Of a stretch of 64,000 bases of DNA, positions 3,744 through 53,009 are shown one piece after another. The DNA is from Sphyrna mokarran. Its lineage: Eukaryota. The stretch covers positions 28,148,001 to 28,212,000 of the forward strand of contig JAGIQG010000014.1 in assembly GCA_024679065.1 (NCBI GenBank). Direction: 5' to 3'. How positions within the stretch are numbered: the stretch's first letter is position 1; each line of letters starts with the position of its first letter. The notes below the pieces were generated by a model. The model ran no database searches. It was given only the letters and a program-made list of their open reading frames with translations, and was not told the DNA's origin. The position numbers were made by a program, and so were the translations under genes.

Positions 3744-4070
3744 AGGGCGGCATGCTGGCACAGTGGTTAGCATTGCTGCCTCAGAGTGCCAGGGACCCAA
3801 GTTTGATTCTGGCTTGGGTATTGTTGGTGTGGAGGTTGTATGTTCTCCCATTGTCTATGTGGGTTTCCTCTGAGTGCTCAGTCCAGTGACGAGCAGGTTA
3901 AGTATATTGGCTTTGTTAAATTGCCCCTTAGTGTCCTACGAAGTGGAAGTTAGATGGGATAGCTATGGTAAATGCATGGACAAGCCTGGGAAAGATGCTC
4001 TTCAGACAGTTGGTGCAGCCTCAATGGGCTGAATGGTCTCCTTCTGCACTGTAGGGATTCTATTGTTCTA
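3744..4070 (+). mobile_element. HE1-like V-SINE with CR1 tail
   Basis: gggcggcatgctggcacagtggttagc head, V-domain core (gtgggtttcctc..) and a CR1-like tail. Confidence 0.85.
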
Positions 4071-4811
4071 TAATAAATCATTAGTGATTAGAGCTAACTG
4101 TTTCAGCTAACTAACAATAGAGAGGAGATATTCTGAAAACACTGATTCGAGAAGTAATTTCCGATTTTGCTAACTGGTTCTGATATTTCAAAACTTAGTG
4201 TTTTTGAGTGTTCTCCAAATAAAGGCTGGTGAGTCAACCAGAATGTATTTTTCTGCCGAGTTGTAGATGAATCTGAAAGGAAATGGTGTTTATAAGAGGA
4301 AGTTGTCAACATTGTTGCTATTGTCAGCTTATTATCTTGCGCAATGTAAGTGTTAGGAAATGTAGCAGTTTATAATTTGCATAACCCAATTTACAGGCAA
4401 AAGATATTTCCCAAAGCATTTAATCGGGTCCAATAGGTACAAATGGTATAGCAAAACACTCAGGTGTATCAAATGCTGAGGAAAAGGCAATTATGAAAAA
4501 ATCTAGATGGACCGTCTGGCATTGACCTATTCACTGGAAATAACAAAGGTGCATTAGACAACTCAACTCTGCAATGTCCTCCTCATTGTCCCACTGACTA
4601 ACTAAGCAGCAACTTAATCACCATATCATACATTACTGACATTGTAGCATTCACTGTTGAGCACGTCCTTGCCACCAACAAGACAGATGCACCAGAGGTG
4701 GTAGTGCAGTGTTTTATAATCAGAAGCAACATTTCGGATGGACCCAATGAAACTTCATGACATCAGGTCAAAGGTGGGCAAGATAATCTCTTGCTGATTA
4801 CCACCTACTTT

Positions 4812-5453: not shown

Positions 5454-5526
5454 GAACAAAGAACAAAGAACAAAACAGCACGGGAAACAGGCCCTTCGGC
5501 CCAACGAGCCCATGCCACCACCCCGA
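5454..5526 (-). mobile_element. Extreme 3' tail of the same CR1 subfamily
   Basis: gaacaaagaacaaagaacaaaacagcacgggaaacaggcccttcggcccaacgagccc matches the copies at 30623 and 19342. Confidence 0.8.
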
Positions 5527-5675
5527 CTACCAACATGAGTAGACTAGAAATCAATCATAATCTGTAACCTCATGACCCAATATATTCCTCACTCTGTCAT
5601 TACCATCTAGCCAGGGATCAACCTAAATGCAGTAGGGGGTGAATGAGAGCTGCTATCTCTGCAGTCCTGCCACAT

Positions 5676-16127: not shown

Positions 16128-17069
16128 AGAGATTATGCAGAGAAATGAGTTTAAAACTGGTTTTGCAAACCAGTATTGGGCAGTGCAGTGCAGAGGAATA
16201 ACGACAAAGAAGCAAGAAGGACACCTTATGTCTCTCTATCTCTCCCTCTCACTGGGTCCCACCTAACTTGACTTGAACTCTGCACTCTCACACAGATACT
16301 CTGACCGACCCCTCTCGTTCTGATTCCCCCAACCCACCCCAATCAAATCCAGCTCCAATATCATGCTTTGGTTCTGACTGCAATTTCCATGTACCATTCC
16401 CCAACTTTGGTCCGGGATAGTTCGTCCCCACCACCCTCTCCCTCAACTGTAGTTTGGGACAGCTCTTCACCTCGAAGTTGCTGGGAGTGTACAGCACAGC
16501 TCCTGTCTCACCCAGCCTGTGTGTGGAAGGTTCGGCAAGACAGGAGCTGTGCAACCACAATGAATGTAAAACTCTCGAGAGTGGCAATCCAATGGAGATT
16601 GCCACTCTACAGAAGTAACAGGCCATATAACCCTCAAATTTGAGTTGGGGCTAATAAGTTTAGACCCTGAGACTTGGGGAGTGGATGGATGGAAAAGATG
16701 AATCCTGGAACTGAAATGAATTAGGAATTGATAGGGATCCGGCAGTGCTCTCAAGCACATACTGTACAGTGGAACAAGATATTTAGAGTAAATGAGAAAC
16801 CAAGTAAATCAGATATTATTGAAGTAATTTCCTTGCATTTTTCGATGTAGGTTGTTGTATGTATTTGATAGCTTTGAGTGCATTATCAAATTCAATGATA
16901 AATTCATTCCAGGTTAGAATTTTTGATGCCAATGTGAGCATTAAGTACAGTTGAAAGCAAAAATGATGTTACAGTTTGAGGTGGGGCAGGGCTTTGGTGA
17001 AACAATGAGGAGCATTTCCTGGGCTCGCCCACTGCCAGGATCATCTGGTCCTATCGAAAGGCAATCATT

Positions 17070-17412
17070 GAATCATAGAACCCTACAGTGCAGAAAGAGG
17101 CCATTCAGCCCATCGAGTCTGCACCGACCACAATCCCACCCAGATCTTAACCCCATATCCCTACATATTTATCCACTAATCCCTACATATTTACCCACTA
17201 ATCGCTCTAACCTATGCATCTCAGGACGTGAAGGGGTAATTTTAGCATGGCCAATCAACTTAACCCGCACATCTTTGGATAGTGGGAGGAAACCGGAGCA
17301 GACACGAGGAGAATGTGCAAACTCTACACAGATAGTGACCCAAGCTCGGAATCGAACCCAGGTTCCTGGAGCTGTGAAGTAGCAGTACTAACCACTGCGC
17401 TACTGTGCTGCC
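17070..17412 (-). mobile_element. HE1-like V-SINE
   Basis: A and B boxes, V core and CR1 tail on the reverse strand. Confidence 0.85.
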
Positions 17413-17759
17413 TATTGCCTTATTGAGCCTGCACCAACAACTAATACATATTTAAATCCCATGCACAGGTGTAATTCAATGAAATCTATTTACAGACTTT
17501 TGACTGGACCGCAGCATCCCCCATGATGGGTCCCATTACAAGGGGGCCAGAATATCCCAACCCATATCTGGAATACTGAGTACAGTTTTGGTTTGCATTG
17601 GAATTTGTTCAGGGAATGTTCACTTGGCTGACTCCTGGGAGAAAGGGCTAATCTTAGAAAGAAAAGATGAACAGATTGGGTGTACATCTATGGGAGTTTA
17701 GCAGAATGAGAGCTGATTTTATTGAACCATATATGATTTATGTTATTTTTGGGGACCAC

Positions 17760-18160: not shown

Positions 18161-19873
18161 CCAATTCATTGATGGTTTTGAGCATGAGCACATCCGATCA
18201 TCTTCATAGCCCATGTCTTTCCCCCTTTTGGCCCCGAGACTCTTGTACTTTGACCTGGTTCCATTGCCTCTGTGACCTCTGCACCCTCAATCTTCCAGCC
18301 TGGTGCATTGACCACTTCTGGCACTCGTGCCTCTTCTGCTACTTCCCTTGCCACGCCATTTCCCCCATTCTTATTGCTACCCCCTCACCTTTGGCAGTGC
18401 CCTTCTGGGGCCACTGCCCATTCCTCTTTATCAGTACCCTTTGAGGCCTCGGTCAATTCCCCATGCCAGTACCCCTGGTGCCCTTGCTGCTAACCCTTCA
18501 CCTTTGCCAGTACTTTTGAAGCCTTTACCCCCTTGCCCTTACCAGGATAATCCAAGCGTCTGCCTGTTCTTCTTCACCTTGTCAGTGTCCTTTCTCTCCT
18601 CTGAAAAAGTTGTGTGTTCACTTCCAAACTCCTTCAGAGGTGAGCTCGCCAGCTTCCAATCTTTTAAAAGTAGTTGCGATTTGCGCCATCGTGATATTAT
18701 GTGTCTGTCAGTGGACCTTCAAACGTTGGGGGGAATGATTGCTGCAGAGAGGTTTGATGTTCACTTATGTTCACTTATTGATATTAGCTTTTCAACAACG
18801 CATGGTGAGAAACTCATCATGTCACTTGCAGGACGAGGGGATGACCTCAGAGAGATTTTTTGCTAACATAACATGTCATTTGGGATTATCTGCTCCTGTC
18901 ACCAATCCTGCCCACTGAGAACAGGAACGAAAAATCCTGGCCATAGACTAATTTTCATTTGTTACAATGTGATAGTCCTAGTCAGAGATAAAATCATTGC
19001 CAACAGCCCACCTCAGAGATTTAAATGAAGAATTCCACAAAATATTTGCCAAGGTTAGCATGGGCTCAACTGAACACTTGATCAGCCTGTCACAAAAGAA
19101 GTGAGATAGGTCTTGTCAGGCCTCTGCTAATCCTTCATGATCATGAATTTAAAATAAATCAGAACTGAGACATGCCTGATGCAACTAGCTGGTATTTTGT
19201 TCCTTTCCCTTTTAATTAGGATTTTAAAAAAGTATTTTATGGGATGTGAGCATTGTTGGCTAGGCCAGCATTTATTGCCTCTCCCGATTGATCTTGAGAA
19301 GGTGGCAGTGTGACTCCTTCTGCAGCAGTCCATGCGGTGTAAACAAAGAACAAAACAGCACGGGAAACAGGCCCTCCGGCCCAACGAGCCCGCGCTGCCA
19401 CCCCGATGTTCCCACCTCTACCCGCAATCCCTGTCCATGTTTATAGATCTATGGATTAAAAACCAAATTTGAGTCAATTTAGGGAGAATTTGTTTTGCCA
19501 ATTAGCCCAAGAGCACATCTTTGGGATGTGGGAGGAAACCGGAGCACCCGGAGAAAACCCACGCAAGCACGGGGAGAATGCGCAAACTCCCACAGACACA
19601 GGCCCAATCCATGTATCTGCACAGCACAGCGATAGTCACTGAGCTGTCGTGTTGCCCATCAAATGGTCCAGGTCAAGCGTACACTAACGACGTGAAGCAC
19701 TAGGATACTCTTGAAAAAAAAATCCAAGAGCAGCCCTCTCGCGACCCATCGCGTGTATGCCCCTCGTTAGACAACAAGGTGGACCAAAGCACCTGTAGGA
19801 TAAAAACAAGTACATCAATATCATCATCTATTTACACACTTCCCAGGGACTCCCAAGGCTCATGATCCCTATT

Positions 19874-22750
19874 TTAAATCAGTTTTTCTATACCCCTCCA
19901 TTCCCATTCTGTTCATGTGCCCATCTAAGTATTTCTTAAATAACTCCAGAGTGCCTACCTCCACCACTTTACTTGGCAGCGCATTCCATACCCCCACCAC
20001 CCTCTGTGTGAAAAACTCCCTCTAGCATCCAAATTATACCTTACCCCCCCCTCACTCTAAGCCCATGATCCCTCGTGCTATTTGAGTCCATCCTAGGAAA
20101 AAGCTTAACCCTGTTTACTCTATCTATACCTCTCATAATCTTGTACACCTCTATCAGATCTCCTCTAAGTCTACGTCTTTCTAAGGAAAACAGTCCCAAT
20201 TTGCCTAATCTCTCCTCGTAACTCAGACCTTCCATACCAGGCAGCATCCTGGTAAAACTCCTCTGCACTCTCTCCAGAGTCTCCACGTCCTTCCGGTAGT
20301 AAGGCGACCAGAACTGGATGCAGTATTCCAAATGAGGTCTAACCAGCGTTTTATACAACTGCAACATTAAAGGCCAGCTCTTTTACTCTATACCCCTTCC
20401 TATAAAGGCTAACATACTATATGCTTTCTTCACAACCTTCTCCACTTGCTCTGCCACCTTCAGAGACTTGTTCACCTGCATCCCCAGTTCCCTCTGCATT
20501 TCTATTCTCTTAATAGGTCTACCCTTTATCATATACTTCCCCCCTACATTCTTTCTCCCGAAATGCATCACCTCACATTTCTCAGGATTGAATTCCATCT
20601 GCCATCTGTCTGCCCAAGCTACCAGCCTATCTATGTCCTGCTGCATCCCCTGACAATGCTCCTCACTATCCGCAAGTCCAGCCATCTTTGTATCGTCTGC
20701 AAACTTGCTGATCACTCCACTTACTCCCTCTTCCAAGTCATTTATATATATTACAAATAGAAGAGGTCCCAGTACCGAGCCCTGCTGCACACCACTAGTG
20801 ACCAACCTCCAGCTAGAAAAACACCCTTCCACTATTACTCTCTGTCTCCTATTACCAAGCCAGATCTAGCTACCTGTCCTTGTATCCCATTTGCCTTGAC
20901 CTTCTCAAATAACCTCCCATGAGGGACTTTGTCAAACGCCTTACTAAAATCCATATAGACGACATCAACGGCTCGCCCTTCATCCACCGTTTTCGTCACC
21001 TCCTCAAAAAATTCTACCAGATTTGTAAGGCACGACCTCCCCTTAACAAATCCATGCTGCGTATCCCTAATCAGATCGCAATGCTCTAAGTGCCTATACA
21101 TCCTATCTCTAAGAATCCCTCCAACAGCTTCCCTACCACTGATGTCAAACTCACTGGCCTATAATTTCCAGGGTTATCCCTACTACCCTTTTTAAACAAC
21201 GGTACAACATTAGCTATTCTCCAGTCCTCTGGACCTCACCTGTGTCCAAGGAAGAGACAAAGATTTGCGTCAGAGGCCCAGCAATTTCACCTTGCACCTC
21301 CCTAAGCAGCCTGGGATAAATGCCATTAGGCCCCGGAGATTTATCAGTTTTAATGCTACCTGGAAGCTCTAACACTTCCTCCCTCGGTATGGATATTTCC
21401 CTCAACTGGTCCACAGCTCCCTCAGAGACAGGAGCTGTCAACAAGCCCCTCTCCTTCATGAATACTGACGCAAAATATTCATTCAGGATCTCTGCCATTC
21501 CCTCGGGCTCTAAGCACAGTTCCCCTCCTCTGTCCCTAAGAGGTCCGATTTTTTCCTCTAACCACCCTTTTATTCCTAACATAGGAGTAAAAAGCCTTTG
21601 GATTTTCCTTAATCCTATCTGCCAAAATCATTTCATGCCCCCTTTTTGCCCTTTTAACTCCCCATGTGAGCTCCCTCCTACTCTCTCTATATTCCTCCAA
21701 CGCTGTCTCCGTTCCCAGCTGCTTTGACCTATCATACGCCTCTCTTTTCTTCCTAACCAAGTCCTCAATATCCCTAGTAATCCACGGCTTTCTAATCCTA
21801 CCTTTCCCATCTTTCCTCTTGGCCGGCACATACTTATCTTGCAACATTTTCAGTATTCCCTTGAAAGAGTCCCACATGCCTAGCATGGACTTACCCTCGA
21901 ACAACTGTTCCCAATCAGTATCCCTAAGTTCCTGCCTAATCCGACCATAGTTAGCCTTCCCCCAATTCAACACCCTGCTCTTAGGGCAACAAGCATCCTT
22001 TTCCATCTGAATCCTAAAGTAGACAGAATTGTGGTCACTGTTAGCCACATGTTCCCCTACTACAACATCAACCACCTGCCCTGGCTCATTACTCAGAACT
22101 AAATCCAATATAGCCCCTTCTCTAGTCGGGCTAGCCACATACTGCTCCAACGATCCTTCCAGTAGACATTTTGCAAATTCCTGCCCACCCAAACCCCCAG
22201 CTCTAGGTACCTTCCAATCCACCCTAGGGAGATTAAAATCTCCCACTATAACGACTCTGTTCTTTCTGCACCTATCCAAAATGTCTTTACATATGCCTTC
22301 TTCAACTACCCACGGGCTGCTGGGTGGCCTATAATACACCCCCAGCATAGTAATCGCTCCCTTTCTATTCCTCAACTGCATCCACAGCGACTCCACTCCT
22401 AACTCCTCTGTATTGTCCTCCCTCTGCCGTGATGCTCTCCTTAACTAACAGCGCCACTCCTCCACCTCTTCTGGACCCTCCTCTGTCACTCCTGAAACAC
22501 TTTTACCCAGGAATATTCACCTGTTACTGCTCCCCTTCCTTTAACCAAGTCTCCGTCACCGCAACCACATCCAAGTTCCTCACAAACATTAAGGCCCTAG
22601 GTTCATCCGTTTTTCCTGTTACACTCCTCGCATTGAAACAGACACACTCCAGACCTCCAAGTCCACTCGGAACCTCCTTCTTCCCGGTATATTTCTTCTC
22701 ATCCAAGCTTACTGTATCTCCCATCTTGTTCTCTACTGAGCTATTGGTCT
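19874..22750 (-). pseudogene. CR1 ORF2 (APE endonuclease plus reverse transcriptase), frameshifted
   Basis: Consecutive ORF pieces carry NARSV, VTETWL, YYRPP, GDFN, SDHN, QHGFVKGRSC, DFSKAFDKVPH, QGSVLGP, FADDTK and RPHLEYC. Confidence 0.92.
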
Positions 22751-22772
22751 CAGCCCCTCCCCCCCCTCCATA

Positions 22773-23663
22773 TTAGTTTAAATCCTGCCGAAATACGCCA
22801 GCTAACCTTCCAGCTAAGATATTTACGCCCTTCCCATTTAAGTGTTTCCCGTCCCTTCTGTACAGGTGCCCTTCTTTTACAAAGACTTCCCAGTTATCCA
22901 CAAATACGAAACCCTCTGCCCGACACCAGTCCTTCAGCCACGCATTCAGCTGTAGGATCTCCTTTCTCCTGGCTCTGCTATTACCCGGCCCTGGAAGCAG
23001 TCCTGAGATCGCCACCCTGGAGGCCCTGCTCCTCAGCCTACCCCCCAACTCCCTGAATTGCCTTCTTATATCCTCCCTGCACTTCCTTCCTACATCCTTC
23101 TCTCCTACGTGAATAATTACATCCGCCTGGGTCCCCTCACCTTTCAAGATGCCCTCTACCCTGTCAGGCACATCTTGCACCCCTGCTCCAGGAAGGCAAA
23201 TTACCATTCTGGAGTCCCACCTTGGACCACAGAAGCGTCTATCTATTCCTTTAACCCTCCCATCCCCCACCACTATCTCCCTTCTAGCCCCTTTCCTCCC
23301 CTTTGAGGCACTCTGGTCCTCGTGCCTTGCCTTTTTTACCCCTTCGCCCTCGATATTTTGGGGGGCTGCCACTGGGGAAGTCTTTGGACTGTCTCCCCTC
23401 TCCTTTCTCCCCTTCCTGACAGTAATCCACCTGTAAGGGTCACGTTCCCCCCACTTAGGCTCCGGCTCCGCCACCTTACTCTGCCTCCCTTCCACGATTC
23501 CCTCATTCTCCCTGACTAAAAATGCATCTTCCAATCGCCGCTCTAGTTGCTTGACCCGAGCCCTCAGATGATGCAGCTCCAAACACTTGACGCATACGTG
23601 GACTTTCGGGAGAGATCTTGCCTCCAGGAACTCCCACATATGACACCGTACAAGGTGAGGCAT
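22773..23663 (-). CDS. CR1 ORF1p: Zn-finger/leucine zipper plus SGNH esterase-like domain
   Basis: CHMWE..HVCVKC, heptad LELHHLRARVKQLERRL, then IVVGDG..CLPGA..IHVGEKD..DGKHLN; open for 296 aa. Confidence 0.85.
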   Translation of the reverse strand: MPHLVRCHMWEFLEARSLPKVHVCVKCLELHHLRARVKQLERRLEDAFLVRENEGIVEGRQSKVAEPEPKWGERDPYRWITVRKGRKERGDSPKTSPVAAPQNIEGEGVKKARHEDQSASKGRKGARREIVVGDGRVKGIDRRFCGPRWDSRMVICLPGAGVQDVPDRVEGILKGEGTQADVIIHVGEKDVGRKCREDIRRQFRELGGRLRSRASRVAISGLLPGPGNSRARRKEILQLNAWLKDWCRAEGFVFVDNWEVFVKEGHLYRRDGKHLNGKGVNILAGRLAGVFRQDLN

Positions 23664-23957
23664 CTTCCCTTAATCCCTGCCATTGTCCTGAACACCTTTG
23701 GAGGTGTGAATACCAATGGAAAACCAATAGCACACTGTGCCTGAGCCTCCTGTCGCCCAAGCCCCGCGAGCCACAGCCCTTATATCTCTCACTCTGCTTC
23801 CCTATTCACTCACACTGCCCGCTCCCGACGCTGCCCGCTGTCTACTGCCACTTTCTTTTTATACTCCCCAGTTTCCTTCCCAGCTAGCCCCAGGCCTAAC
23901 TACAGCAGCAAAAAGCACTCAAAAAGAGAGAGAGAAAAAAAAGCAAATTGAAAAATT

Positions 23958-26110
23958 CCCACAGTGCTGGTAGAAAGGGAGTTTCAAGATTTTGACCCAA
24001 GAGTTGTAAAGTGACATAGTGCTTCAATGCAAAATCAGGATGATGTGTGACTTGGAGGACAATTTGCAGGAGATGGTGTTCCCATGCATCTGCAGCCCTT
24101 GTCTTGCTAGGTGCTGGAAAGTGCAGGATTGGAAAGTGTGCTGAATGAGGCTTAATAAATTGCTGTAATACGACATGTAGATGGTGCAGCAGTGGTGGAG
24201 AGAATGAATGTTTAAGGTGGTGGATGGGTTGCCGATCAAGTGAGCTACTTTGTCCTGGTTGGTGTTTAGCTTCTTGAATGCTGTTGAAGCCACAGGCAAG
24301 AAGAACATATTCCATCACAGTCCTGATCCTTACATTGTCAATGGTGCTAAGGTTTTGAGGAGACAGGAAGTGCATTTCTTGCCACAAAGTTTTTTATTCA
24401 TTCAATTGTGAGGCATGCATGTCACTGGCTGACCAGCATTTATTGCCTGTCTCTTGTTGCCCTCGAGAAGATGATGGTGAGTCACCTCTTTGAATCATTG
24501 CAGTCCATGCGCTGTGGTTGACTCACAATGCCAATAGGTGGGGAATTCCAAGATTTTGACTAAGAAACTGCTAAGGAACAGCATCTGACTTACTCTTGTA
24601 GCAATAATATATATATGACTGATCCATTTCAGTTTCAGGACAATTGCAACATCCAGTATGTTTGGCAATTCAGTGAAACAATGCTATTGAATGTCAAAGG
24701 GTGATGGTGGGATTCTGCCTTCATGGAGATATTTACTGCCTTTCATGTATATGACACAAATGGTACTAGCTACTTATCAGCCCAAGTCTGAATGTTGTCT
24801 AGGTGTTTCTGCATTTGGACACTGACTGCTTCAGTATCTGAGGCATTTCAAATAGTGTTGAATGCTTTGTAATCACAAACATCCTCACTTCTGACCTTAC
24901 GAATGACGAAGATCATTAATGAAGCAGACAAAATTAGTTGGACCTAGGTCATGATCCTGAATAAATCCTGCAGTGATGTGCTAGAACTGAGATGATTGGC
25001 CTCCAATAACTAAAAACATTTTCTTTTGTTCTAGATATGACTTTAGCCAGTGGAAAGTTTCCCCCGATTCCCATTTAGTCCAGCTTTGCTCGTGCTCCTT
25101 AAAGCTATACTCAGTCAAAAGCTGCCTTGATGTCAAGAGTTGTCATATTCTCACTTTCACTTCTCCTCTGAATTGAGCTCCTTTGTCCATGAATCATGGT
25201 TGCAGTGGGGTCAGGAGCAAATTGGCCTGGGCAGATCCCAAACTGATCATCAATGACAAGATTATTACTGACTAAGTGGCACTTAATAGCACTGCCAAGG
25301 ACACCTTTCATCAACTCGCTAATAACTGAGAATAGACTGACGTGGCAGTAATTGGCCTGATTGGATTTATTCTGCTTTTTGTGCAGAGGGCTTATCTGGA
25401 CAATTTTCTGCATCGTTGGGGTTTGGTCACATTGTATTGTACTGGAATATCTTGGCTCGGGGCACAGCTAGTTTTGGAGCACAGTTCTTCATGCCACAGC
25501 TAACATGTTGTCAGATCCTATAGACTTTGCTATTTCCAGTGGCTTAAGCCATTTTATAACGTCATGTGGAGCAAACTAAATTGGCTGAAGTCTGGCATTT
25601 GTGATGGTATGGAGCTCTGGAGAAGGCTAAGATTGAACAAAGAAAATTACAGCACAGGAACAGGCCCTTCAGCCCTCCAAGCCTGCATCAACTATGCTGC
25701 CCGACTGAACTAAAACCCCCTACGCTTCCCTCTATTTGCTTTCTATTCAAGTATTTGTCAAGATGCCCCTTAAAAGTCACTATCATATCTGCTCCCACTA
25801 TCTCCCACATCAGTGAGTTCTGGGCACCCATCACCCTCTATGTAGAAAAACTTGCATTGTACATCTCAAGATGAATCATCCATTTACACTTCAGGATAAG
25901 ATGGCTGCAAATGCTTCAGCTGTGTCTTTTGCACTGATGTCCTCGACTCCTTGGCTATTGAGGATGCTGATGAAACCTCTTCATTGGTCAGTTTATAATT
26001 GTCAACCACTATTCATGAATGAATGTGGCAGGACTGCATAACTTTGATTTGATCCATTGGTTGTGGAGCCACTTCATTCTGTTTATAGTCTGCTGCTTCT
26101 GCTTTTTAGT
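23958..26110 (-). mobile_element. Old APE-RT LINE fragments (host of the full-length CR1; its 3' end continues at 19225-19341)
   Basis: ANYCHVSLFSVISELMKGV..DDQFG..LDIKAAFD RT remnant; a CR1 tail is nested at ~25635-25867. Confidence 0.7.
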
Positions 26111-27560: not shown

Positions 27561-28659
27561 CTCATCATCGTGCCACTTAAAGAATTATATAGTCATTGAC
27601 TTGCATATGGAGACAATATCGACAATGGCTGAGGAGTGTGTGTGTGAATAACTAATATCTTTATTAATGTGAGCAAACAAAATAACACTTTTTTTCTATT
27701 GCAGAGAGCAGCACTTTTTTACCCTCTGGTGTGTCCCTTACCACAGACCATGATAACATTTTCACTTCAAATGCCACCAAAGGTCAGTTTACATGTCCAA
27801 ATAATACAAGTTATCATTTTTACCCAAATAAAAATACTTAATATTTATTTGCATAGATTGTGAACAACCTGACTTCAAATAATCTAGGTAACCAAGAATG
27901 TGCATTGAAGAAATGCTTTTTACGCAAATGTCTAAACTTAAAATTCCTGGTTTTAAATTAGGTCAAACATTGCAAATGGATGGGGGAGGACATTTGTGGT
28001 TAATATATAGAAATGTCAAGTTATTTGCAAAACAGCCTTCTGTCTTTGCAACAGTCCAGTGTGATATCTTTAGAAAAAGGAAACAACTTTCTTGGTGTTT
28101 GTTTGCTGAGACAACCTGTAGCAGTTTCTGTCAGTTTTATAGTTGCAGTTTGGTGTTTTGATTTGAGCAACTGCGGTCTATCTTTTGGTGATTGGTGTTA
28201 ATTGGGCACATTATAATTGATTCTACTTATCATTAGGACATTGAGGTTCAATTAACCTTGCTGGTCAGTCTGTTGCTATTTGCCTCCACGGTGAGGACAG
28301 TGTTCTCTCCCTTGATTGTAAAACAGAAACTGAATTTCCACATGTCTGGACACTGATTAGCATTTTTGATATAAAGAATCTAACATTGTCTATGTTGGTG
28401 ATGGAAAATCAGTATTCTGAAATGTCTCATATATGTATTTCAGTATTAGATACTGAACCTGATTAAGCTATTAATTAGAAAATGTTTCATGGTTATGAAA
28501 TGCGGCAAGTATTATTTCACAATTGTTTCTCAGGCACATGCAGAAAATGCAAAAGTGTTGACTAAGAGATGATATAACTCAAAAGAGTTGTGTCATAAAC
28601 TGAATATTAAAAACCTCAGCTGAGACGAAGTCATTGATTTCTGATGTATCTATTAATTG

Positions 28660-28985
28660 AATCATAGAGTCCCTACAGTACAGAAAGAGACCATTTGGCC
28701 CATTGAGTCTTTCCCAACAATAATCCCACCCAATCCCTATTCCTATATCCCCCCATGCATTTTATCTGCTAATCTCCCTGGCACTAAGGGTCAATTTATC
28801 ATGGCTAATCAACCTAACCTGCACATCTTTGGACTGCGGGTGGAAACTGGAGCATTCAGAGGAAACCCACATGGAAACAGGAAGAGTGTGCAAACTCCAC
28901 ACAGACAGTGACCGAGATTGGACTTGAACCTGGGACCCTGGCGCCATGAGATAGCAGTGCTAACCACTGTACCACCATGCTGCTC
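28660..28985 (-). mobile_element. HE1-like V-SINE
   Basis: Homologous to 17070-17412. Confidence 0.85.
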
Positions 28986-29162
28986 CTACGGTTTAGTAAC
29001 ACATCAAACCCCAATGCGACTCTAATATAGGCCACCCAAGCTACTAAAAACAAGTCAATAAAATATTGTTACAGCAAATTTCCATCAAATTGTTTACAAA
29101 TCGGAGACATAGATGTCCCTCATTGTATGGACTGTACTTAGACTTTGTCCATGTTAAATGAT

Positions 29163-29460
29163 TAAAATTTATTTATTATTGTCATAAGTAGGTTTATGTT
29201 AACATTGCAATGGTATTACTGTGAAAATCCCCTGGTTGCCACATTCTTGTGTCAGTTTCGGTATACTGAGGGAGAAATTAGCATGGTCTAACCAGCCCAT
29301 CTTTTGGATTTGTGGGAAAAAAACAGAGCACCCAGAAGAAACCCAAGCAGACACAGGGAGATTGTGCAGCCTCCGTATAGACAAGAACCCAAGCCAGGAA
29401 TTGAACCCGGGTCCCTGGTACTGTGAGGCAACAATGCTAACACTGTGCCACTGTGCTGCC
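29163..29460 (-). mobile_element. V-SINE with an alternative (non-CR1) tail
   Basis: HE1-like head and core, but the tail ends ..cttatgacaataataaataaat; sister copy at 37835-38092. Confidence 0.8.
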
Positions 29461-29539
29461 AATCGTTTTCAGGCCCCTCCCATGGTGGTTCTACTTGAGT
29501 AAAGCAAAACAATCAAACATTATAGCATGCTATTGATGT

Positions 29540-29852
29540 CATACAACCCTACAGTACAGAAGGAGAACATTCAGCCCATCGAGTCTCCACCAACTACAAT
29601 CCCACCAGGTCCTATCTCTGTATATTTGCCCCCTAATCCCTCTAGCCTATGCATCCTGGGACACTAAGGGGCAATTTAGAATGGCCAATCACACACATTT
29701 GGACTGTGGGAGGAAACTGGAGTACTGGGAGGAAACCCATGCAGACACAGGGAGAATGTGCAAACTCCACATAGACAGTAACCCGAGCTGGGATTTGAAC
29801 CGAGGCTTGGAGCTAAGAAGCAGCAGTGCTAACCACTATGCTACCGTGCCAC
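29540..29852 (-). mobile_element. HE1-like V-SINE
   Basis: Homologous to 17070-17412. Confidence 0.85.
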
Positions 29853-30493
29853 CCCAATTGTGAATTCCCGATGCATCAAACATTTCTCTTATGCACATTT
29901 TCCAGCTGTCTTCAATTGCCCTCATCTCAGGACTAGCCAATTCACCAGACTTGGATAGAAACTGAAGCAGCAAAGAGCTAAAAAGAACAGAGCCTGGGAA
30001 CGGTGCTTATTAGGAATGGAGATCAGATGTTTCCTACATAATATTCCAAGAATAAACAAGTAAAATAAAACCAAGCATAAGATCTTTCATCCTCCAAGGT
30101 TTCAGTACAGGCCAGTGGAGGTTGTAAGTTTCCCTTTTGACTTCTGCTTACTTACTTTTTGAACCACAGCTTTGTCTCCTCAGCGCACACTACTTAACTT
30201 TTGCACAATACCAATTTCTGTGGTCAGCAGCAACGGCTGCTGTCAACTATTCTGTTGCAAAAATTGAATTCAAGTATCTACACTATTTTCAAGAAGTCAT
30301 GTTTCCTACATTCTGTTCTGTGCATTTTAATATATGAGTGACTTATACACCAGTGCAAGGTCAAAATGATTTTTTTTTAAAATGAAAATTGTTCTCCTGT
30401 CAATAAAGGAGCAATTTATATTATAAATTAACTGGGTAAAAGTTCTGTGATAACTTCAAAGGCAACTTGTTGTAAGTTTAAGTTATAACTAGA

Positions 30494-30622: not shown

Positions 30623-31240
30623 GAACAAAGAACAAAGAACAAAACAGCATGGGAAACAGGCCCTTCGGCCCAACGAGCCCGTGCCGACAACCCGATGTTC
30701 CCACCTCTACCCGCAATCCCTGTCCATGTTTATAGATCTATGGATTAAAAACCAAATTTGAGACAATTTAGGGAGAATTTGTTTTGCCAATTAGCCTAAG
30801 AGCACATCTTTGGGATGTGGGAGGAAACCGGAGCGCCCAGAGAAAACCCACGCAAGCACAGGGAAAATGCGCAAACTCCACAGACACAGGCCCAAATCCA
30901 TGTATCTGCACAGCACAGCGATAGTCACTGAGCTGTCGTGTTGCCCATCAAATGGTCCAGTCAAGCGTACACTAACGACGTGAAGGACTAAGATACTCTC
31001 GAAAAAAATCCAAGAGCAGTCCTCTCACGACACATCGCGTGTCTGCCCCTTGTTAGACAACAAGGTGGACCAAAGCACCTGTAGGATAAAAACAAGTACA
31101 TCAATATCATCATCTATTTACACACTTCCCAGGGACTCCCAAGGCTCATGATCCCTATTTTAAATCAGTTTTCTGTACCCCTCCATTCCCACTCTGTTCA
31201 TGTGCCCATCTAAATATTTCTTAAATAACTCCAGAGTACC
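30623..31240 (-). mobile_element. 5'-truncated copy of the V-SINE-tailed CR1
   Basis: Near-identical to 19342-19955 across the whole 3'UTR and the end of ORF2. Confidence 0.92.
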
Positions 31241-41862: not shown

Positions 41863-42742
41863 AGAACATAGAACATAGAACAATACAGCACAGAACAGGC
41901 CCTTCGGCCTTCGATGTTGTGCCGACCAAAATAAAAAGCAATGCACCTCCTAACTAAACCATTCCCTTCTCATCCATATACTTATCCACTAACCTCTTAA
42001 ACGCCACCAAACTTGGCGCATCTACAACAGCTGCAGGCAGGGCATTCCACTCCCTAATCACTCTTTGAGTAAAGAACCTAACTCTGATATCCGTCCTATA
42101 ACTCATACCCCTTAATTTAAAGCTGTGTCCCCTCGTGCTAGCTTTCTCCATCCTAGGAAAAAGGCTATCACTGTCCACCCTATCCAACCCTCTAATTATC
42201 TTATATGCCTCAATAAGATCCCCCCTTAGCCGCCTCCTTTCTAACGAAAACAACCTCAAATCCTTCAACCTCTCTTCATAGACCTGCCCTCCATACCAGG
42301 CAACATCCTGGTAAACCTCCTCTGTACCCTCTCCAATGCCTCCACATCTTTCTTATAATGTGGCGACCAGAACTGCACACAATACTCCCAAGTGCGGCCG
42401 CACTAGAGTTTTGTACAGCTGCAACATGATGCTGCGGCTCCTAAATTCAATCCCCCTACCAATAAAAGCTAAGACTCCATAAGCCTTCTTAACAACTTTA
42501 TCCACTTGACTGCCTACTTTCAGGGATCTATTGACACATACACCAAGATCCTTCTGTCCTCAACACTATTAAGAGCCCTACCATTAGCCCTATACTCTAC
42601 ACATTTATTGTTCCTGCCAAAGTGCATTACCTCACACTTTTCCACATTAAACTCCATTTGCCACCTCCCGGCCCAGCTCTGCAACTTGTCCAAGTCACTC
42701 TGTAAACTAAAACACCCCTCTTCACTATCTACCACACCACCA
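41863..42742 (-). mobile_element. CR1 3' fragment, second young subfamily
   Basis: WQMEFNVEKCEVMHFG and LERRRLRGDLIEAYK motifs; same tail as 34195. Confidence 0.9.
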
Positions 42743-43929
42743 ACTACCACAGACACCAATTGTGTCTTTTTGCAACAGAAATATTAGGAGAACCTGCATC
42801 TTTGTCATGTGAAAATAGCATTGTAAACATGGCAATCAATTAAGAATAAGGATACTTTGATTTTATAAGCTGATAATTATAGCCTCTGAGAAGCAAGAAA
42901 TTAAGTGAAAGTTCTGAGAATAAAATTTTAGTGCAAAGAAGGCACTTGGAAAAATAACACTTTACAAGACTTTGAAAGACTTATATTTGCTGAAGGGAAG
43001 ATCATTCATGCTGAAAACGATTGTGTGTTCATCTGTAAATAAAAATTAATTTTAGTCTATATCGCTTCTGAAATATGATTTTTCTATAATTAAGTAAGAA
43101 TCCTATGTAAATTCTGATGTTTAGCATTGTGCACAAATGGGTAATTGTCAAATTTAGGTAGCATTACATAGAGTTTACAGCATCAATGGAGGCCATTGGG
43201 TCAAGTCTATCTAAGTCAGTGTTTATACTCAGTGTTGTTTTTTGTTGTAGGTTAAAATAATATCTCGAAGATTGTTAGTGAGTCAAAAATACAGTGGTTT
43301 TTATTTCAAAACTCTGGCATACATTCCAGAAGTTTGGGAGAAACTTGGGACTACCAGACTTCTCATAGAACACAAACACAAGTGGGCATTTATACATCAT
43401 GAGTCTTAGTGTCAATCACAATTCAAAGTTCCAATTTTGACCAGACTGTTGGAGTCTTCCTCCCTGGGTCGAGATGCAGCCCCAGAGTTATTCCGGAATT
43501 ACAGTCCTGCAGTCAGGACACAAGCTTAACCTGGTCATGATTCAAAACCTTTCTGCAGCAGTACCAGCATCCCTGTCTTTGAAGTTACTTGTGCAATCCT
43601 GGCTGTCCCAGCAGGACTCTTCCTGTTAAAAGCCAGTATCGTAAACTACCATCTGTGTAACAATGTTCAACTAACACAAATAGGTAAGATTTACAAAGTC
43701 CAAAAAATAACAGCCATATTAAACTATCTGTCTTTATAAAAATGAGAGTTAAAGCATGTAAGACATGAACAAATAATTTATATTACTGCCAGGAGCAATA
43801 TAAGCTTGAGAAGACCAGTAATGATGAACATTGGGAGTCCAATAAAAAAAGGAAAAGGATTGCATGCATGAGGTCTTGGCAACTAAAAGCAGATGAAGCA
43901 CTTGAAGAAGGGCAAAAATGGGTCACAAA

Positions 43930-44239
43930 ATCATAGAATATTTACACGGCAGAAGGAGGCCATTCGGCCCATCAAGTCTGCACTGATCACAATCCTATCC
44001 AGGCCTATCCCCCATCCTCATATGTTTACCCTGCTAATCTCCCTGACTCTGAGGGGAAATCTAGCATGGTCAATCAAGCTAACCTGCACATCTTTGGACG
44101 TGGGAGTAAATCAGAACACCTGAAGGAAATGCATGAAGATATGGAGAGAATGTGCAAACTCCACACAGTGAGTGAAGTGGGAAATTGAACTCAAGTCCCT
44201 GAAGCTGTGAGGCAGCAGCGCTAACTACTATGCCACCCC
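43930..44239 (-). mobile_element. HE1-like V-SINE
   Basis: V core and CR1 tail. Confidence 0.8.
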
Positions 44240-49155: not shown

Positions 49156-51252
49156 ATCTCTTCCAAAATCCATGCAGAACTTAAAAAATATTATATATCC
49201 AAATACTAGATTTCTCCTTTTATATCTTTGAGTAAAGATTTCATTATCTTTCCTGCCCTCAATTTAACTGGTCTACAGCTCCTGGATTATATTTTTATCT
49301 TGGAATACATTATACTGCCTCTCTTTTTCCCTAGTCTATCTTGGCTTGAGTGGATGTTTCAACTTCTAGATTTGATCATTATTTATAGATGGCAGACAGA
49401 TCTTAAGTGTTATATATTTTTGATTTATTTTTCTAATGCCATGTCTACTGCATTAGTTTTCCTTGTGAATACTGAAGCAAAGTAATAATTCAATATTTCT
49501 GCTATTTTGCCTTCACTGCCTGAGTTTATCTTGTGCATTCCTTGAGAACTTACTTACATCCTGCTTTTCCTTGTTATTTATGCATTTGTCGCTTAATAAA
49601 ACATTTTTCTGTTCAACTGTTCTTTCGCATTCATTCCTAACCTATTAGTATTCCCTTTTGGCATCTTCACCTTGATTGCCCATAGACATAATCTATATTT
49701 TTTTTTCTGATTTTTCAATTATTTATACCCTTTTTCAATCATGTGAATTTGGGTGAAATCTTACCAAAAAAAATGGCTGTTGGGATTCAACTGAAAACTA
49801 GTATTCCTCTATCCAGTTTTCTGTCCAAATCTCATGAAATTTTGGCTAAGAAAAATACAAGGTAGTATGTTTCACACTGCTCCTGACAGTCATCACCATC
49901 ATCCTCCCCCAACAGTTAAAGGGTACCCCGTCCCCTCAACATTTATCTCCACTCCCACTCCATTATTACCAGCATCTCTCCCCTTTCTCCACCACTACAC
50001 ACAGGCATCTCCTCTCCCCTAAACCTAAGAGGCTCTCACTAAGGCTTACCCCAGGCGCAGGTTGGTATGGTGCCAGTCTGGCAATTCCCTATGCCAGGGA
50101 CAGTGCCAGGGCACTACCTGGTCACATCTCTCTTCTCCAGTATCTTTGCACTCCCAAACAAAACCCCCAAAAGATTCACTCCTGGGTGATCCTATTGTAA
50201 ATTTTGCTGACATAACATGCACAAAAGTTTAGTAAAGGGGGAAGATTTGGGCAGGGCGAGTAATGATATTAACATTTATTTAAATTGCTATAAATCAGGG
50301 TTCTCACTCATCATGAGGCAAGGGGCAATGAAAATCAAAAACGGCCATCTTGCTGATGAGATTTATGATTTCTGGGTTTTGCCGGACCTTGGACCTCAGA
50401 CCTCTCCTGCTGATCCTGTGGCTGGAGTGGAGGGTCAAGACCGTCCCCTGCATTCTTGGCGAGTTTGTTCTCTCTTTGAGCAGTATGGTCCTCCTGAAAT
50501 TTATTCATCACTTTTGATATTACTTTCAGCTGCTGTTCTCTTTGTCAATTTTTTTCTTTACGGTTTACCTTCCCTCGTTCCATTCATAGCTCCTCGAAAT
50601 CAACTTATTTTCCAAACTGAGTTTGATTGTATGTCTTTTATCGAACTATCATTATTTGGTCATTTATTAGCCTCGAATCAACGTGAATGAGATTGTCAGT
50701 ATTTATGAGCAGATGACAGAGCAACATCGGATGAGCAGTAGATGCAGTCAAACACAACTGGGTTTAATTAGGAATGATGGTGGAGTATTGGGAGAGTGTG
50801 GGCAGGGAAAACTGAGCAGGAGTCGCACCGCATTGGAGTTCTGGTTCTGAAAACTGTTCCCAAATATCTTGGTGAATGCTTGATGCAGGAATCCTGCCTA
50901 CTCACTCATTAACCTAGTAAATATTCTTGCCAATGTGAATTGTGCAAAGCCAATTATCCAAGTGGACTGTAATGTAATGGGATTTTAGTGAGATTTGGGG
51001 GAGATGGTGGATAATAATAGTCACTGGAGAAGTAAAAGCCCAGGGATTGGGGAATTGGGTTTGAATCTCACCATGGTAGATGGGGGAATTTAAAATTTAA
51101 TACATATCTGGAGTTAAAATTCTAGTGATTACCATGAAATTACTGTTGATTGTCATTAAATCTGTCTGGTTCATTAATGTCCTTAAGGGAAGGAAATCTG
51201 ACATTTTTCAAAGGTCTAATTAATAAGAAAAATCAGTAGTGACTTAAGGATA

Positions 51253-52634
51253 TAAATGACTTGGAAGAGGGAGTAAGTGGAGTGATCAGCAAGTTTGCAG
51301 ATGATACAAAGATGGCTGCACTTGCGGATCGTGACAAACATTGTCAGGCAATGCAGCAGGACATAGATATTCTGGTAGCTTGTGCAGACAGATGGCAGGT
51401 GGAATTCAATCTTGATAAAAGTGAGGTGATGCATTTCGGGACAAAGAATGTAGGGGGGAGGTATATGATAAAGGGTAGACCTATTAAGAGTATAGAAATG
51501 CAGAGGGACCTGGGGGTGCAGGTGAACAAGTCTCTGAAGGTGGCTGAGCAAATGGAGAAGGTTGTGAAGAAAGCATATAGTATGCTGGCCTTTTTAGGAA
51601 AGGGTATAGAGTACAAGAGCTGGCCTTTAATGTTGCAGTTGTATAAAACGTTGGTTAGACCTCATTTGGAATACTGCGTCCAGTTCTGGTCGCCTTACTA
51701 CCGGAAGGACGTGGAGACGCTGGAGAGAGTGCAGAGGAGGTTTACCAGAATGCTGCCTGGTATGGAAGGTCTGAGTTACGAAGACAGATTAGGCAAATTG
51801 GGACTGTTTTCCTCTGAAAGACGTAGACTTAGAGGAGATCTAATAGAGGTGTACAAGATTATGAAGGGGATAGATAAACAGGGTTAAGCTTTTTCCTAGG
51901 ATGGACTCAAATAGCACGAGGGGTCACAGGCTTAGGATGAGAGGGGTAAGGTATAATTTGGATACTAGAGGGAGTTTTTTCACACAGAGGGTGGTGGGGG
52001 TATGGAATGTGCTGCCAAGTAAAGTGATGGAGGCAGGCACTCTGGAGTTATTTAAGAAATACTTAGATGGGCACATGAACAGAATGGGAATGGAGGGGTA
52101 TAGAAAACTGATTTAAAATAGGGATCATGAGCCTGGGGAGTCCCTGGGAAGTGTGTAAATAGATGATGATATTGATGTACTTGTTTTTATCCTACAGGTG
52201 CTTTGGTCCACCTTGTTGTCTAACAAGGGGCATATACGCAATGGGTCGTGAGAGGGCTGCTCTTGGATTTTTTTTGGAAGTATCCTAGTGCTTCACGTCG
52301 TTAGTGTACGCTTGACCTGGACCATTTGATGGGCAACACGACAGCTCAGTGACTATTGCTGGGCTGTGCAGATACATGGATTTGGGCCTGTGTCTGTGGG
52401 AGTTTGCGCATTCTCCCCGTGCTTGCATGGGTTTTCTCCGGGCATTCCGGTTTCCTCCCACATCCCAAAGATGTGCTCTTAGGCTAACTGGCAAAACAAA
52501 TTCTCCTTAAATTGTCTCAAATTTGGTTTTTTAATCCATAGATCTATAAACATGGACAGGGATCGCAGGTAGAGGTGGGAACATCTCGTGGGAACAGAAC
52601 GAGAAGGCCTGCTTCTCGTGCTGTTTTGTTCTTT
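51253..52634 (+). mobile_element. 5'-truncated copy of the V-SINE-tailed CR1 (RT C-terminus plus 3'UTR)
   Basis: ORF 51261-51887 nearly identical to the 20041-20832 pieces; same 3'UTR in the opposite orientation. Confidence 0.93.
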
Positions 52635-53009
52635 ATTCAGCAGACTTTGCCAATGACTCCCAAAGGCCACCCAGCAAAACCCAGTCATGTTTGCCCTTGG
52701 CTTCAAATGATGGGATGTCCCTCATCGACAGATCAATAAAGGGCCTGACAGAAGGGCAAGGGAAGTCCACACTGAAACTCACCATCCCTTGCCTCTGCCC
52801 CCCCCCATCCCTTTTTGCCTGGCACCCCATACCACCTGCAACTCAAATGGGCACTGGAATTTGGTGTTGATCCTGGCGTTGGGCCTCAGTGTAAGTAATG
52901 AGTTTAAAAGTAGGATGCATTTAGAGGAACGATGTTGAAAACAAACACCACTTGGTCATTTACAAAATTTCCAAGCCATGTATTTGCAATTTGAGGCTTA
53001 TGAGCCTCT

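What the first reader, a model, noticed from the sequence alone, without database searches (positions are those of the whole stretch)
19342..19873. An autonomous CR1 LINE that has captured a whole V-SINE as its 3' end and spreads as a chimera
Seen: after the ORF2 stop, the element has ~215 nt of unique sequence, then a recognisable HE1-like SINE (head gggcaacacgacagctcagtga, V core gtctgtgggagtttgcgcattctccccgtg..ggtttcctcccacatcccaaagatgtgc) and only then a CR1-type terminus. The same ~520-530 nt 3'UTR occurs in three separate insertions (19342 -, 30623 -, 52117-52634 +), with a matching tail at 5454, so the chimera itself retrotransposed. The other young CR1 here (34195, 41863) has a 3'UTR under ~100 nt. 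Known: HE1 SINEs borrow the tail of their CR1-type partner LINE (HER1), and the V domain is considered SINE-specific. Inference: the flow is reversed here, with the LINE adopting its parasite's body, perhaps to gain whatever RNP or stability advantage the V domain gives. I do not know of this being described, but cannot search.
Basis: partly seen in the sequence, partly recalled or inferred. Interest (0 to 1): 0.85.

Follow-up and report, generated by a model that had tools for sequence, protein, structure and literature searches.

The report
Shark CR1 LINE carrying SINE fossil
A family of jumping genes (a CR1-type LINE of a shark-like fish) carries, inside its own 3' untranslated end, the conserved core and decayed remains of one of the small parasitic elements (a V-type SINE) that normally borrow the LINE's tail, and the whole chimera has copied itself several times.

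Summary
One CR1-clade LINE family has four separate insertions in the window: A about 23890-19342 (-), B 31240-30631 (-), C 51250-52637 (+), and D, a 70-nt tail at 5530-5461 (-). A, B and C share the same ~530-nt 3'UTR, at 91-95% identity. They have different 5' truncation points and unrelated flanks, so the chimera moved as a unit.

"A whole HE1 SINE" is only partly supported. The ~85-nt V core is as close to the local SINE consensus (84-89%) as the free SINE copies are. Similarity in the tRNA-like head is probable: 34 of 51 columns match, starting at the SINE's first base, and 0-1 of 2000 shuffles reach the score for A and B. The box B region is missing. The first 28 nt after the core are weakly similar. 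The terminal hairpin resembles other CR1 LINE tails slightly more than SINE tails.

SINE-to-LINE capture is the best reading (about 0.65). No copy here is intact (ORF2 of A is in at least 7 pieces), but dN/dS of 0.45 between A and C suggests active ancestors. I found no selective benefit of the V core. I found no published description, and Repbase and Dfam could not be checked.

The parts
19342..23890 (-). Copy A: near full-length CR1-clade LINE. The 5' end is uncertain, about 23890. ORF1 is open, ORF2 is broken, and the 3'UTR is chimeric.
   Evidence: ORF list. Pfam: GDSL esterase/OSK in ORF1, Exo_endo_phos_2 in 21536-22396, RVT_1 in 20383-21101. The 5' end was only read by eye.
22773..23663 (-). 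ORF1 of copy A, 296 aa, open, esterase type.
   Evidence: Pfam PF13472, E 1e-08, and PF17182, E 2.5e-07. Relatives are found in rays and skates, best 67% identity.
19876..22724 (-). ORF2 remnants of copy A (endonuclease and reverse transcriptase), in at least 7 pieces.
   Evidence: Relatives of the same region, searched with copy C's open frame 51261-51887, are found in sharks, rays, birds and turtles.
19661..19875 (-). Spacer, 215 nt, found only in this family. It contains a pyrimidine run followed by AG and a run of 9 T.
   Evidence: No other match in the window. No vestigial CR1 tail: 0 of 5 comparisons significant. No Rfam match in 19567-19900, which holds the spacer.
19597..19660 (-). Head-like segment: decayed 5' half of a tRNA-related SINE head. 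The box B region is missing (an 18-column gap).
   Evidence: Alignment A2. Test against the consensus of 8 heads: 34 of 51 columns identical; shuffles reaching the score 1/2000 (A), 0/2000 (B), 112/2000 (C). Head-only HMM: 2/300. Pairwise tests were not significant, 0 of 6.
19513..19596 (-). V-type core (central SINE domain).
   Evidence: Pairwise z 18-27 against 5 of 6 SINE copies and 4.8 against the sixth. 77 of 87 columns identical to the SINE consensus. Collinear nhmmer match, E 2.2e-24.
19420..19512 (-). Post-core segment. The first 28 nt are weakly SINE-like; the last ~30 nt run into the CR1-type tail module (which spans about 19342-19450).
   Evidence: shuffles reaching the score 60/2000 (A), 27/2000 (B), 149/2000 (C). 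Pairwise tests not significant. My reading for the tail module.
19342..19419 (-). CR1-type terminus: two-tier hairpin followed by (TTCTTTG)n.
   Evidence: Fold. 75-77% identical to the tails of two other CR1 families, against 61-73% to 5 SINE tails.
30631..31240 (-). Copy B: 5'-truncated insertion. It holds the last ~70 nt of ORF2 plus the whole chimeric UTR.
51250..52637 (+). Copy C: 5'-truncated insertion. It holds ~870 nt of ORF2 plus the whole chimeric UTR. Its terminal hairpin is remodelled: 11 gap columns and 24-29% mismatch in the tail.
5461..5530 (-). Copy D: tail-only insertion of the same family.
17055..17415 (-). Free V-type tRNA-SINE copy used for comparison. The other five are 59025-59353 (-), 29539-29849 (-), 28656-28983 (-), 43929-44229 (-) and 3758-4074 (+).
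41863..42675 (-). 3' part of a second, young CR1 family with a ~92-nt UTR and a (TTCTATG)n tail. A second copy lies at 34195-34537 (-). A third family ends at 48090 (+).

Best explanation
A CR1-clade LINE subfamily of an elasmobranch took up a V-type tRNA-SINE between its stop codon and its own terminal recognition hairpin, and has since amplified as a LINE-SINE chimera.

The 3'UTR now reads: 215-nt family-specific spacer, decayed SINE head (box B region lost), V core, a short SINE-like stretch, then the CR1-type hairpin and (TTCTTTG)n repeat.

CR1-type LINEs are of the stringent kind. Their reverse transcriptase starts on the terminal hairpin and repeat, and SINE and LINE share that module. 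Sequence upstream of the module therefore rides along as cargo.

Shown: the chimera moved as a unit at least three times, and a fourth copy holds the tail alone. The core is homologous to the SINE core. The SINE-like part begins at the SINE's first base.

Inferred: the direction (SINE to LINE); how the joining happened (a template switch or recombination within the shared tail, or a SINE insertion into a master copy's UTR with loss of one tail); that the pol III promoter decayed because a LINE transcript does not need it; and that the source was a V-SINE family other than, or long diverged from, the copies now around it.
For: - Same joints, different truncation points, unrelated flanks.
- LINE identity: ORF1 esterase, endonuclease and RT. 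Relatives in sharks, rays, birds and turtles.
- A profile of 6 free SINE copies aligns collinearly to the UTR over profile positions 68-302 of 329: E 2.2e-24 (A), 1.2e-26 (B, positions 73-302), 2.1e-19 (C, positions 68-262).
- Core 84-89% identical to the SINE consensus, within the range of the free copies, 68-92%.
- Head: 34 of 51 columns identical to the consensus of 8 heads, starting at consensus position 1 and ending 11 nt before the core. Shuffles reaching the score: 1/2000, 0/2000, 112/2000; 2/2000 when the consensus is shuffled. Head-only HMM: 2/300, 2/300, 4/300.
- Post-core: 60, 27 and 149 of 2000 shuffles reach the score, at the collinear place.
- Two other CR1 families in the window share only the tail module (family 3 tail on profile positions 237-319, E 4e-08).
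- The V domain occurs in SINEs from vertebrates to bivalves and cnidarians (PMC4824008, passages).
- dN/dS between A and C is 0.45 over 206 codons. Nd/Sd is 1.9, against 4.0 expected without selection.
Against: - Pairwise tests of the head and the post-core against single SINE copies are not significant (0 of 6 each).
- The full SINE profile does not reach the head.
- Rfam and ARAGORN see no tRNA in the LINE head. They are also weak on the free SINE heads: Rfam found nothing in 28600-29900, and ARAGORN called 3 of 8 heads at its stricter setting.
- Outside the core the LINE segment is only 49-66% identical to the SINE consensus. It is therefore not a copy of the SINE family seen here.
- No source SINE with this head was found. 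The head motif occurs only in the LINE copies.
- The origin of the 215-nt spacer is unexplained.
- No intact copy is in the window.
Confidence: 0.65

Rival explanations
1. The flow is the ordinary one, LINE to SINE. A V core plus tail was an old feature of this CR1 lineage's 3'UTR. V-type SINEs arose when a tRNA-derived head was joined to such a UTR. The head-like similarity in the LINE would then be chance.
For: SINE tails come from LINE 3' ends as a rule (PMC5786205, abstract). The origin of conserved SINE bodies is unknown (same paper, section 24). The head similarity fails the pairwise tests and the full profile. The LINE segment is far from the local SINE family outside the core.
Against: The head match starts at SINE position 1 and is collinear; 0-1 of 2000 shuffles reach the score for A and B. 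Two other CR1 families here have no core. V-SINEs pair with many different LINE partners across animals (PMC3747384, table passages; PMC4824008).
Confidence: 0.13
2. The spacer plus SINE-like block is a 3' module that moves between LINE lineages by template switching or recombination. This CR1 family would then have taken it from another LINE's UTR and not directly from a SINE.
For: An unchecked first-reader note on another window of this genome reports a similar cassette in the 3'UTRs of an R2 and a CR1 element (s1-887730). The 215-nt spacer has no explanation in a simple SINE capture. Copy C shows that the terminal hairpin itself can be swapped or remodelled within the family.
Against: Nothing in this window shows the block outside this CR1 family.
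Confidence: 0.12
3. This is not a mobile chimera. Either the copies are a segmental duplication or assembly repeat, or each LINE copy was hit separately by a SINE.
For: None found.
Against: The flanks are unrelated on both sides and the three 5' ends differ. The spacer-head and core-tail joints are the same in all three copies. The copies differ by 5-8%.
Confidence: 0.02

Closest known systems
HE1 SINE / HER1 CR1-like LINE pair of sharks and rays (Ogiwara et al. 1999; listed in PMC3747384, table passages; the 1999 paper itself was not seen and is recalled)
   Same: A tRNA-derived V-type SINE and a CR1-like LINE that share a conserved 3' hairpin tail in elasmobranchs. The free SINE copies and the short-UTR CR1 family in the window fit this pair: both have a (TTCTATG)-type repeat.
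   Different: In the known pair only the tail is shared and the flow is LINE to SINE. Here the LINE also holds the V core and a head remnant, and its repeat is (TTCTTTG)n.
V-SINE superfamily (Ogiwara et al. 2002, not held; described in PMC4824008, passages)
   Same: An ~80-bp central domain is kept while the head and flanks differ between families. That is exactly the pattern of the LINE segment against the local SINEs.
   Different: The members described are pol III SINEs. This unit has no box B region and sits in a LINE's UTR.
3' transduction and composite retroelements of mammalian L1 (recalled, no call)
   Same: Extra sequence at the 3' end of a LINE transcript is copied along with it.
   Different: L1 transduction carries the flank downstream of the element's own end and depends on poly(A). 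Here I found no vestigial LINE tail upstream of the insert, and the element still ends in a LINE-type hairpin.
LINE-derived SINE bodies (Kojima 2018, PMC5786205: abstract, passages, and sections 4 and 24 read)
   Same: It concerns sequence shared between LINEs and the middle of SINEs.
   Different: That paper finds only 5' parts of RTE and Vingi LINEs in SINE bodies. It states that no sequence similar to the conserved SINE bodies has been found. Here a conserved body, the V core, lies in a CR1 3'UTR.
Stringent-type LINEs that recognise their own 3' tail (eel UnaL2, zebrafish LINEs: Kajikawa and Okada 2002 and Hayashi et al. 2014, as cited in PMC4824008; PMC4176376, start of the abstract only)
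   Same: A terminal stem-loop plus short repeat is the likely recognition module. The two-tier hairpin recurs in three CR1 families and in the SINE tails.
   Different: Recognition was not tested for this element. The fold z-scores of single tails are mostly not significant.

Membership tests
CR1 clade of LINEs | ORF2 with an apurinic-type endonuclease followed by a reverse transcriptase | tested here: met
   Pfam Exo_endo_phos_2, E 5.6e-11 (21536-22396), and RVT_1, E 2.7e-13 and 2.2e-07 (20383-21101).
CR1 clade of LINEs | ORF1 of the esterase (GDSL/SGNH) type, as in many CR1-like elements (feature recalled: Kapitonov and Jurka 2003) | tested here: met
   PF13472, E 1e-08, above the curated cut-off; PF17182, E 2.5e-07.
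CR1 clade of LINEs | 3' end is a hairpin plus a short repeat, with no poly(A) | tested here: met
   Hairpin folds. (TTCTTTG)n ends in A, B and D.
CR1 clade of LINEs | The reverse transcriptase groups with CR1 references in a tree | tested here: inconclusive
   No tree was built. The best named relatives are unnamed or RT-domain proteins of sharks, rays, birds and turtles. This fits CR1 but is not a clade test.
V-SINE superfamily (for the insert in the UTR) | Central V domain of about 80 bp | tested here: met
   77 of 87 columns identical to the consensus of 6 local V-type SINE copies; z 18-27. That the local core is the published V domain is recalled and was not checked against a reference sequence.
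V-SINE superfamily (for the insert in the UTR) | tRNA-related head with pol III boxes A and B | tested here: not met
   Only the 5' half is recognisable. The box B region is an 18-column gap. There is no tRNA call. It is a fossil of a SINE head and not a working one.
V-SINE superfamily (for the insert in the UTR) | Short, non-coding, independently amplified unit | tested here: not met
   The head motif occurs only joined to the CR1 ORF2: 3 of 3 matches.
HE1 SINE family | Close similarity to HE1 along the whole length | tested here: not met
   Against the local HE1-like consensus: head 49-51%, post-core 51-53%, tail 49-66%. Free copies give 68-98%. No HE1 reference sequence was at hand.
L1-type 3' transduction | The element's own 3' end lies upstream of the transduced block | tested here: not met
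   Spacer against 5 CR1 or SINE tails: z -1.2 to 0.7, 0 of 5 significant.

The most novel reading that the evidence does not exclude
The V core is not passive cargo. One possibility is that it is kept in this LINE because it helps CR1-type retrotransposition or RNA survival, which would give the first handle on why V domains have been conserved in SINEs for hundreds of millions of years. The other is that this CR1 lineage descends from the long-sought LINE source of the V domain. The core is as close to the SINE consensus as real SINE copies are, while everything around it has drifted to 49-66%. That pattern fits long-term constraint on the core inside the LINE. It also fits capture from a different V-SINE family.
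Probability: 0.12. Interest if true: 0.8.

Novelty: new variant of a known kind. Interest (0 to 1): 0.5.

Why it matters
SINE-LINE partnerships are textbook cases of one-way borrowing: the SINE takes the LINE's tail. A LINE family that carries the conserved body of its parasite and keeps amplifying shows that the exchange can run the other way.

Kojima (PMC5786205, section 24) writes that no sequence similar to the conserved SINE bodies has been found, implicitly outside SINEs. Here a V domain sits in an RNA of a different kind, presumably a pol II transcript that codes for protein.

This gives a natural test bed for what the V domain does. The same core can be compared in a LINE and in SINEs of one genome, and with and without the core in mobility assays.

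It also matters in practice. Repeat annotation will split such copies into 'LINE' plus 'SINE' and miscount both.

Tried and rejected
1. Vestigial CR1 tail inside the 215-nt spacer (read-through or 3' transduction model). It looked plausible by eye. Local alignment of the spacer to 5 tails gave z -1.2 to 0.7, so I rejected it.

2. Target-site duplications for B and C. The best flank matches are reached by 1437 and 1017 of 2000 shuffles, so there are none. I recall that CR1 often lacks them.

3. A repeat next to copy A. The 3' flank of A resembles 24386-24515. That stretch is the end of an older, unrelated LINE fragment and not part of this element.

4. tRNA detection in the heads. Rfam gave 0 matches at E up to 1 or 10. 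ARAGORN gave inconsistent weak calls on the free heads and none on the LINE head. These tests have no power here.

5. Relatives elsewhere.
- JGI metagenome contigs gave 26 loci with 31-66% identity. None of the 26 holds the spacer, head or tail.
- The head-junction pattern gave 0 matches in genome contigs and 0 in viral contigs.
- ORF1 and ORF2 protein searches gave at most 67% (ORF1) and 87% (ORF2, short ENA contigs) identity, and no DNA could be fetched.

I therefore could not test for a free source SINE, for copy number, or for expression. says only that 20 of 23 listed runs, from 13 studies and several coded organisms, hold part of 51900-52640: 0.88 for the likely source, 0.58 and 0.49 for two others, about 0.3 for five more. 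Three RNA-labelled rows hold 0.18-0.28. Which part they hold is unknown.

7. Literature. Searches found no paper describing a LINE with a V domain or a SINE in its 3'UTR. Two searches used phrase variants and gave 0 and 3 papers, the 3 irrelevant. Ogiwara 2002 is not held. Supplements were not opened; Kojima's supplementary tables could list further LINE-SINE similarities. Repbase and Dfam could not be consulted.
Full report
WHAT IS THERE

The finding's stretch (19342-19873, minus strand) is the 3' untranslated end of a LINE. Upstream on the same strand lie three coding regions:
- an open 296-aa ORF1 (22773-23663) with a GDSL-esterase/OSK domain;
- an endonuclease remnant (21536-22396);
- reverse-transcriptase remnants (20383-21101).

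ORF2 is split into at least 7 pieces by frameshifts and stops, so this copy (A) is dead. Its 5' end is about 23890 by eye only.

Relatives of the ORF2 C-terminal part, searched with copy C's open frame (51261-51887), and of copy A's ORF1 come from sharks (Stegostoma, Chiloscyllium), rays and skates. For ORF2 they also come from birds and turtles. Together with the hairpin-plus-repeat terminus, this places the element in the CR1 group and the window in an elasmobranch.

THE COPIES

blastn of 52100-52640 finds the same ~530-nt UTR at 19342-19891 (91.3%) and at 30630-31174 (91.2%), and a 33-nt tail match at 5461-5493.

With copy A as query:
- B (31240-30631) is 95.1% identical over 615 nt.
- C (51250-52637) is 92.5% identical over 1409 nt.
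- Four other CR1 fragments in the window match only in ORF2, at 68.6-70.0%.

In the three-way alignment the ORF2 end, stop codon, spacer, head-like part, core and tail are collinear (mean column identity 94%). The sequences become unrelated directly after the (TTCTTTG)n tail and, for B, directly before its truncation point. D (5530-5461) is a tail-only copy, 46 of 51 identical to A's hairpin.

Different 5' truncation points, unrelated flanks and 5-8% divergence are the marks of separate retrotranspositions. They rule out segmental duplication and rule out separate SINE hits on each copy. No target-site duplications were found.

HOW SINE-LIKE IS THE UTR?

The window holds 10 free copies of a V-type tRNA-SINE with E below 1e-30 against a profile made from six of them, plus fragments. 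They are old: 64.6-70.2% identical to the query copy in full-length matches.

That profile aligns to the LINE UTR in one collinear piece. It covers profile positions 68-302 of 329 for A (E 2.2e-24), 73-302 for B (E 1.2e-26) and 68-262 for C (E 2.1e-19). It does not reach the head, positions 1-67.

By segment the picture is uneven.

- V core. It matches 5 of 6 SINE copies at z 18-27 and the sixth at z 4.8. It is 84-89% identical to the SINE consensus, inside the range of the free copies themselves, 68-92%.

- Head.
  - Pairwise tests with a strict score fail: 0 of 6 significant.
  - A head-only HMM of 8 heads gives 3.8 bits (A and B) and 3.0 bits (C). That is reached by 2 of 300 shuffles for A and for B, and by 4 of 300 for C.
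  - A +1/-1 local alignment to the consensus of the 8 heads, built without the LINE, gives 34 identical of 51 columns. It starts at consensus position 1 and ends 11 nt before the core. The score is reached by 1 of 2000 (A), 0 of 2000 (B) and 112 of 2000 (C) shuffles, and by 2 of 2000 when the consensus is shuffled instead.
  - These were three tests of one question, so I rate the head as probable, not proven.
  - The box B region is an 18-column gap in the LINE.

- After the core. The first 28 nt align at the collinear place. The score is reached by 60, 27 and 149 of 2000 shuffles, which is weak.

- Overall, outside the core the LINE is 49-66% identical to the SINE consensus, against 68-98% for the free copies (the free copies helped to make that consensus, which flatters them).

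So the insert is not a recent copy of the SINE family seen in the window. It is an old capture or a member of another V-SINE family. A conserved core between drifted flanks is the pattern that defines the V superfamily (PMC4824008, passages).

THE TERMINUS

The last ~110 nt form the module shared by all CR1 families here and by the SINE tails. Family 3's tail hits SINE profile positions 237-319 at E 4e-08. The two-tier hairpin recurs in families 1, 2 and 3 and in the SINE tails, although fold z-scores of single tails are mostly not significant.

A's 51-nt hairpin is 75-77% identical to the tails of families 2 and 3, and 61-73% identical to five SINE tails. The difference is small and the sample small. 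It suggests that the chimera kept a LINE-type end, with the SINE body lying upstream of it.

Copy C has a remodelled hairpin: 11 gap columns, 24-29% mismatch, and its own stable fold. The tail module is therefore itself labile within the family.

The free SINEs and the short-UTR family 2 share a (TTCTATG)-type repeat. They look like the classical HE1/HER1 pair. Those names come from the table in PMC3747384 and from recall.

DIRECTION AND MECHANISM

I favour SINE to LINE, at about 0.65, for four reasons:
- The SINE-like part begins at the first base of the SINE head, as expected if a full SINE RNA was joined.
- Two other CR1 families lack the insert.
- V domains are known from SINEs with many different LINE partners across animals.
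- The LINE copies are much younger than the SINE copies around them.

How the joining happened is open:
- The read-through model fails, because no old tail lies in the spacer.
- A template switch or recombination in the shared tail, or an insertion into a master copy's UTR with loss of one tail, would both fit.
- The 215-nt spacer remains unexplained. It matches nothing else in the window. The Rfam search of 19567-19900, which holds the spacer, found nothing.

The rival that the V core was born in this LINE lineage (0.13) stands or falls with the head similarity.

A third reading (0.12) rests on an untested first-reader note of the same cassette in an R2 element. In it the block is a 3' module exchanged between LINEs.

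ACTIVITY AND SELECTION

Between A and C, over 206 codons, dN/dS is 0.45 (Sd 13.5, Nd 25.5, S 123.7, N 494.3). Nd/Sd is 1.9 where 4.0 is expected without selection. Part of their divergence therefore arose in coding-competent ancestors that already carried the chimeric UTR. The estimate is noisy and ignores mutation bias.

Within the UTR the core differs between copies by 4.8-7.2% and the spacer by 3.8-5.2%. At this time scale nothing shows that the core is protected.

LIMITS

I left those letters, and the same letters in B and C, out of all later searches and worked beside them.
- As a result I have no copy numbers, no cross-species DNA and no RNA evidence.
- One search shows only that runs of several coded organisms hold 0.29-0.58 of the sampled words of 51900-52640. 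That is too much to come from the core alone (about 85 of 741 nt), so close relatives of the family probably exist in other species. This is an inference, because nothing was laid.

WHAT IS KNOWN

I found no paper describing a LINE with a V domain or a SINE fossil in its 3'UTR.

Kojima 2018 screened SINE-LINE similarity across Repbase. The paper reports only 5' parts of RTE and Vingi LINEs in SINE bodies, and states that no sequence similar to the conserved SINE bodies has been found (PMC5786205: abstract, sections 4 and 24).

Ogiwara 1999 and 2002 were not available. Repbase and Dfam could not be checked, and supplements were not opened.

First readers of this scan noted the same architecture in at least 10 other windows of this genome. 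That fits an abundant family, but it is not independent evidence.

VERDICT

This is a real, reproducible LINE-SINE chimera: a new variant of a known partnership. It is not a whole fresh HE1, it is not shown to be autonomous in this window, and its V core has no demonstrated benefit. Interest 0.5.

Noticed in passing
window 52555-52632 (+), against 19342-19425 (-): Copy C of the same LINE family has a different terminal hairpin: 11 gap columns, 24-29% mismatch, and its own stable fold (z -2.5). The rest of its UTR differs by only 3-7%. This looks like tail remodelling or tail exchange within one family.
   Followed up: partly
window 19790-19810 (-), with the same place in copies B and C: The spacer holds a pyrimidine run ending in AG, which looks like a splice acceptor. 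It is invariant in all three copies. Not tested.
   Followed up: no
window 34195-34537 (-) and 41863-42675 (-): Two nearly identical 3' ends of a second, young CR1 family with a ~92-nt UTR and a (TTCTATG)n tail. The free V-type SINE copies carry the same repeat type, so this family is the likely current partner of those SINEs.
   Followed up: partly
window 46096-46611 (+): A 171-aa ORF with a weak GIY-YIG nuclease match (E 0.00017, just under the Pfam cut-off). It may be a Penelope-like element fragment.
   Followed up: no
window 24386-25400 (-) and 19229-19340 (-): Fragments of an older, unrelated LINE flank copy A on both sides, and the two fragments cover the same part of that LINE. They are therefore two copies, and copy A did not split a single element.
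   Followed up: partly
window 23720-23900 (-): Upstream of ORF1 of copy A lies a G-rich stretch with a TATA-like motif. It may be the LINE's 5'UTR and promoter. With one long copy only, the 5' end could not be fixed.
   Followed up: no
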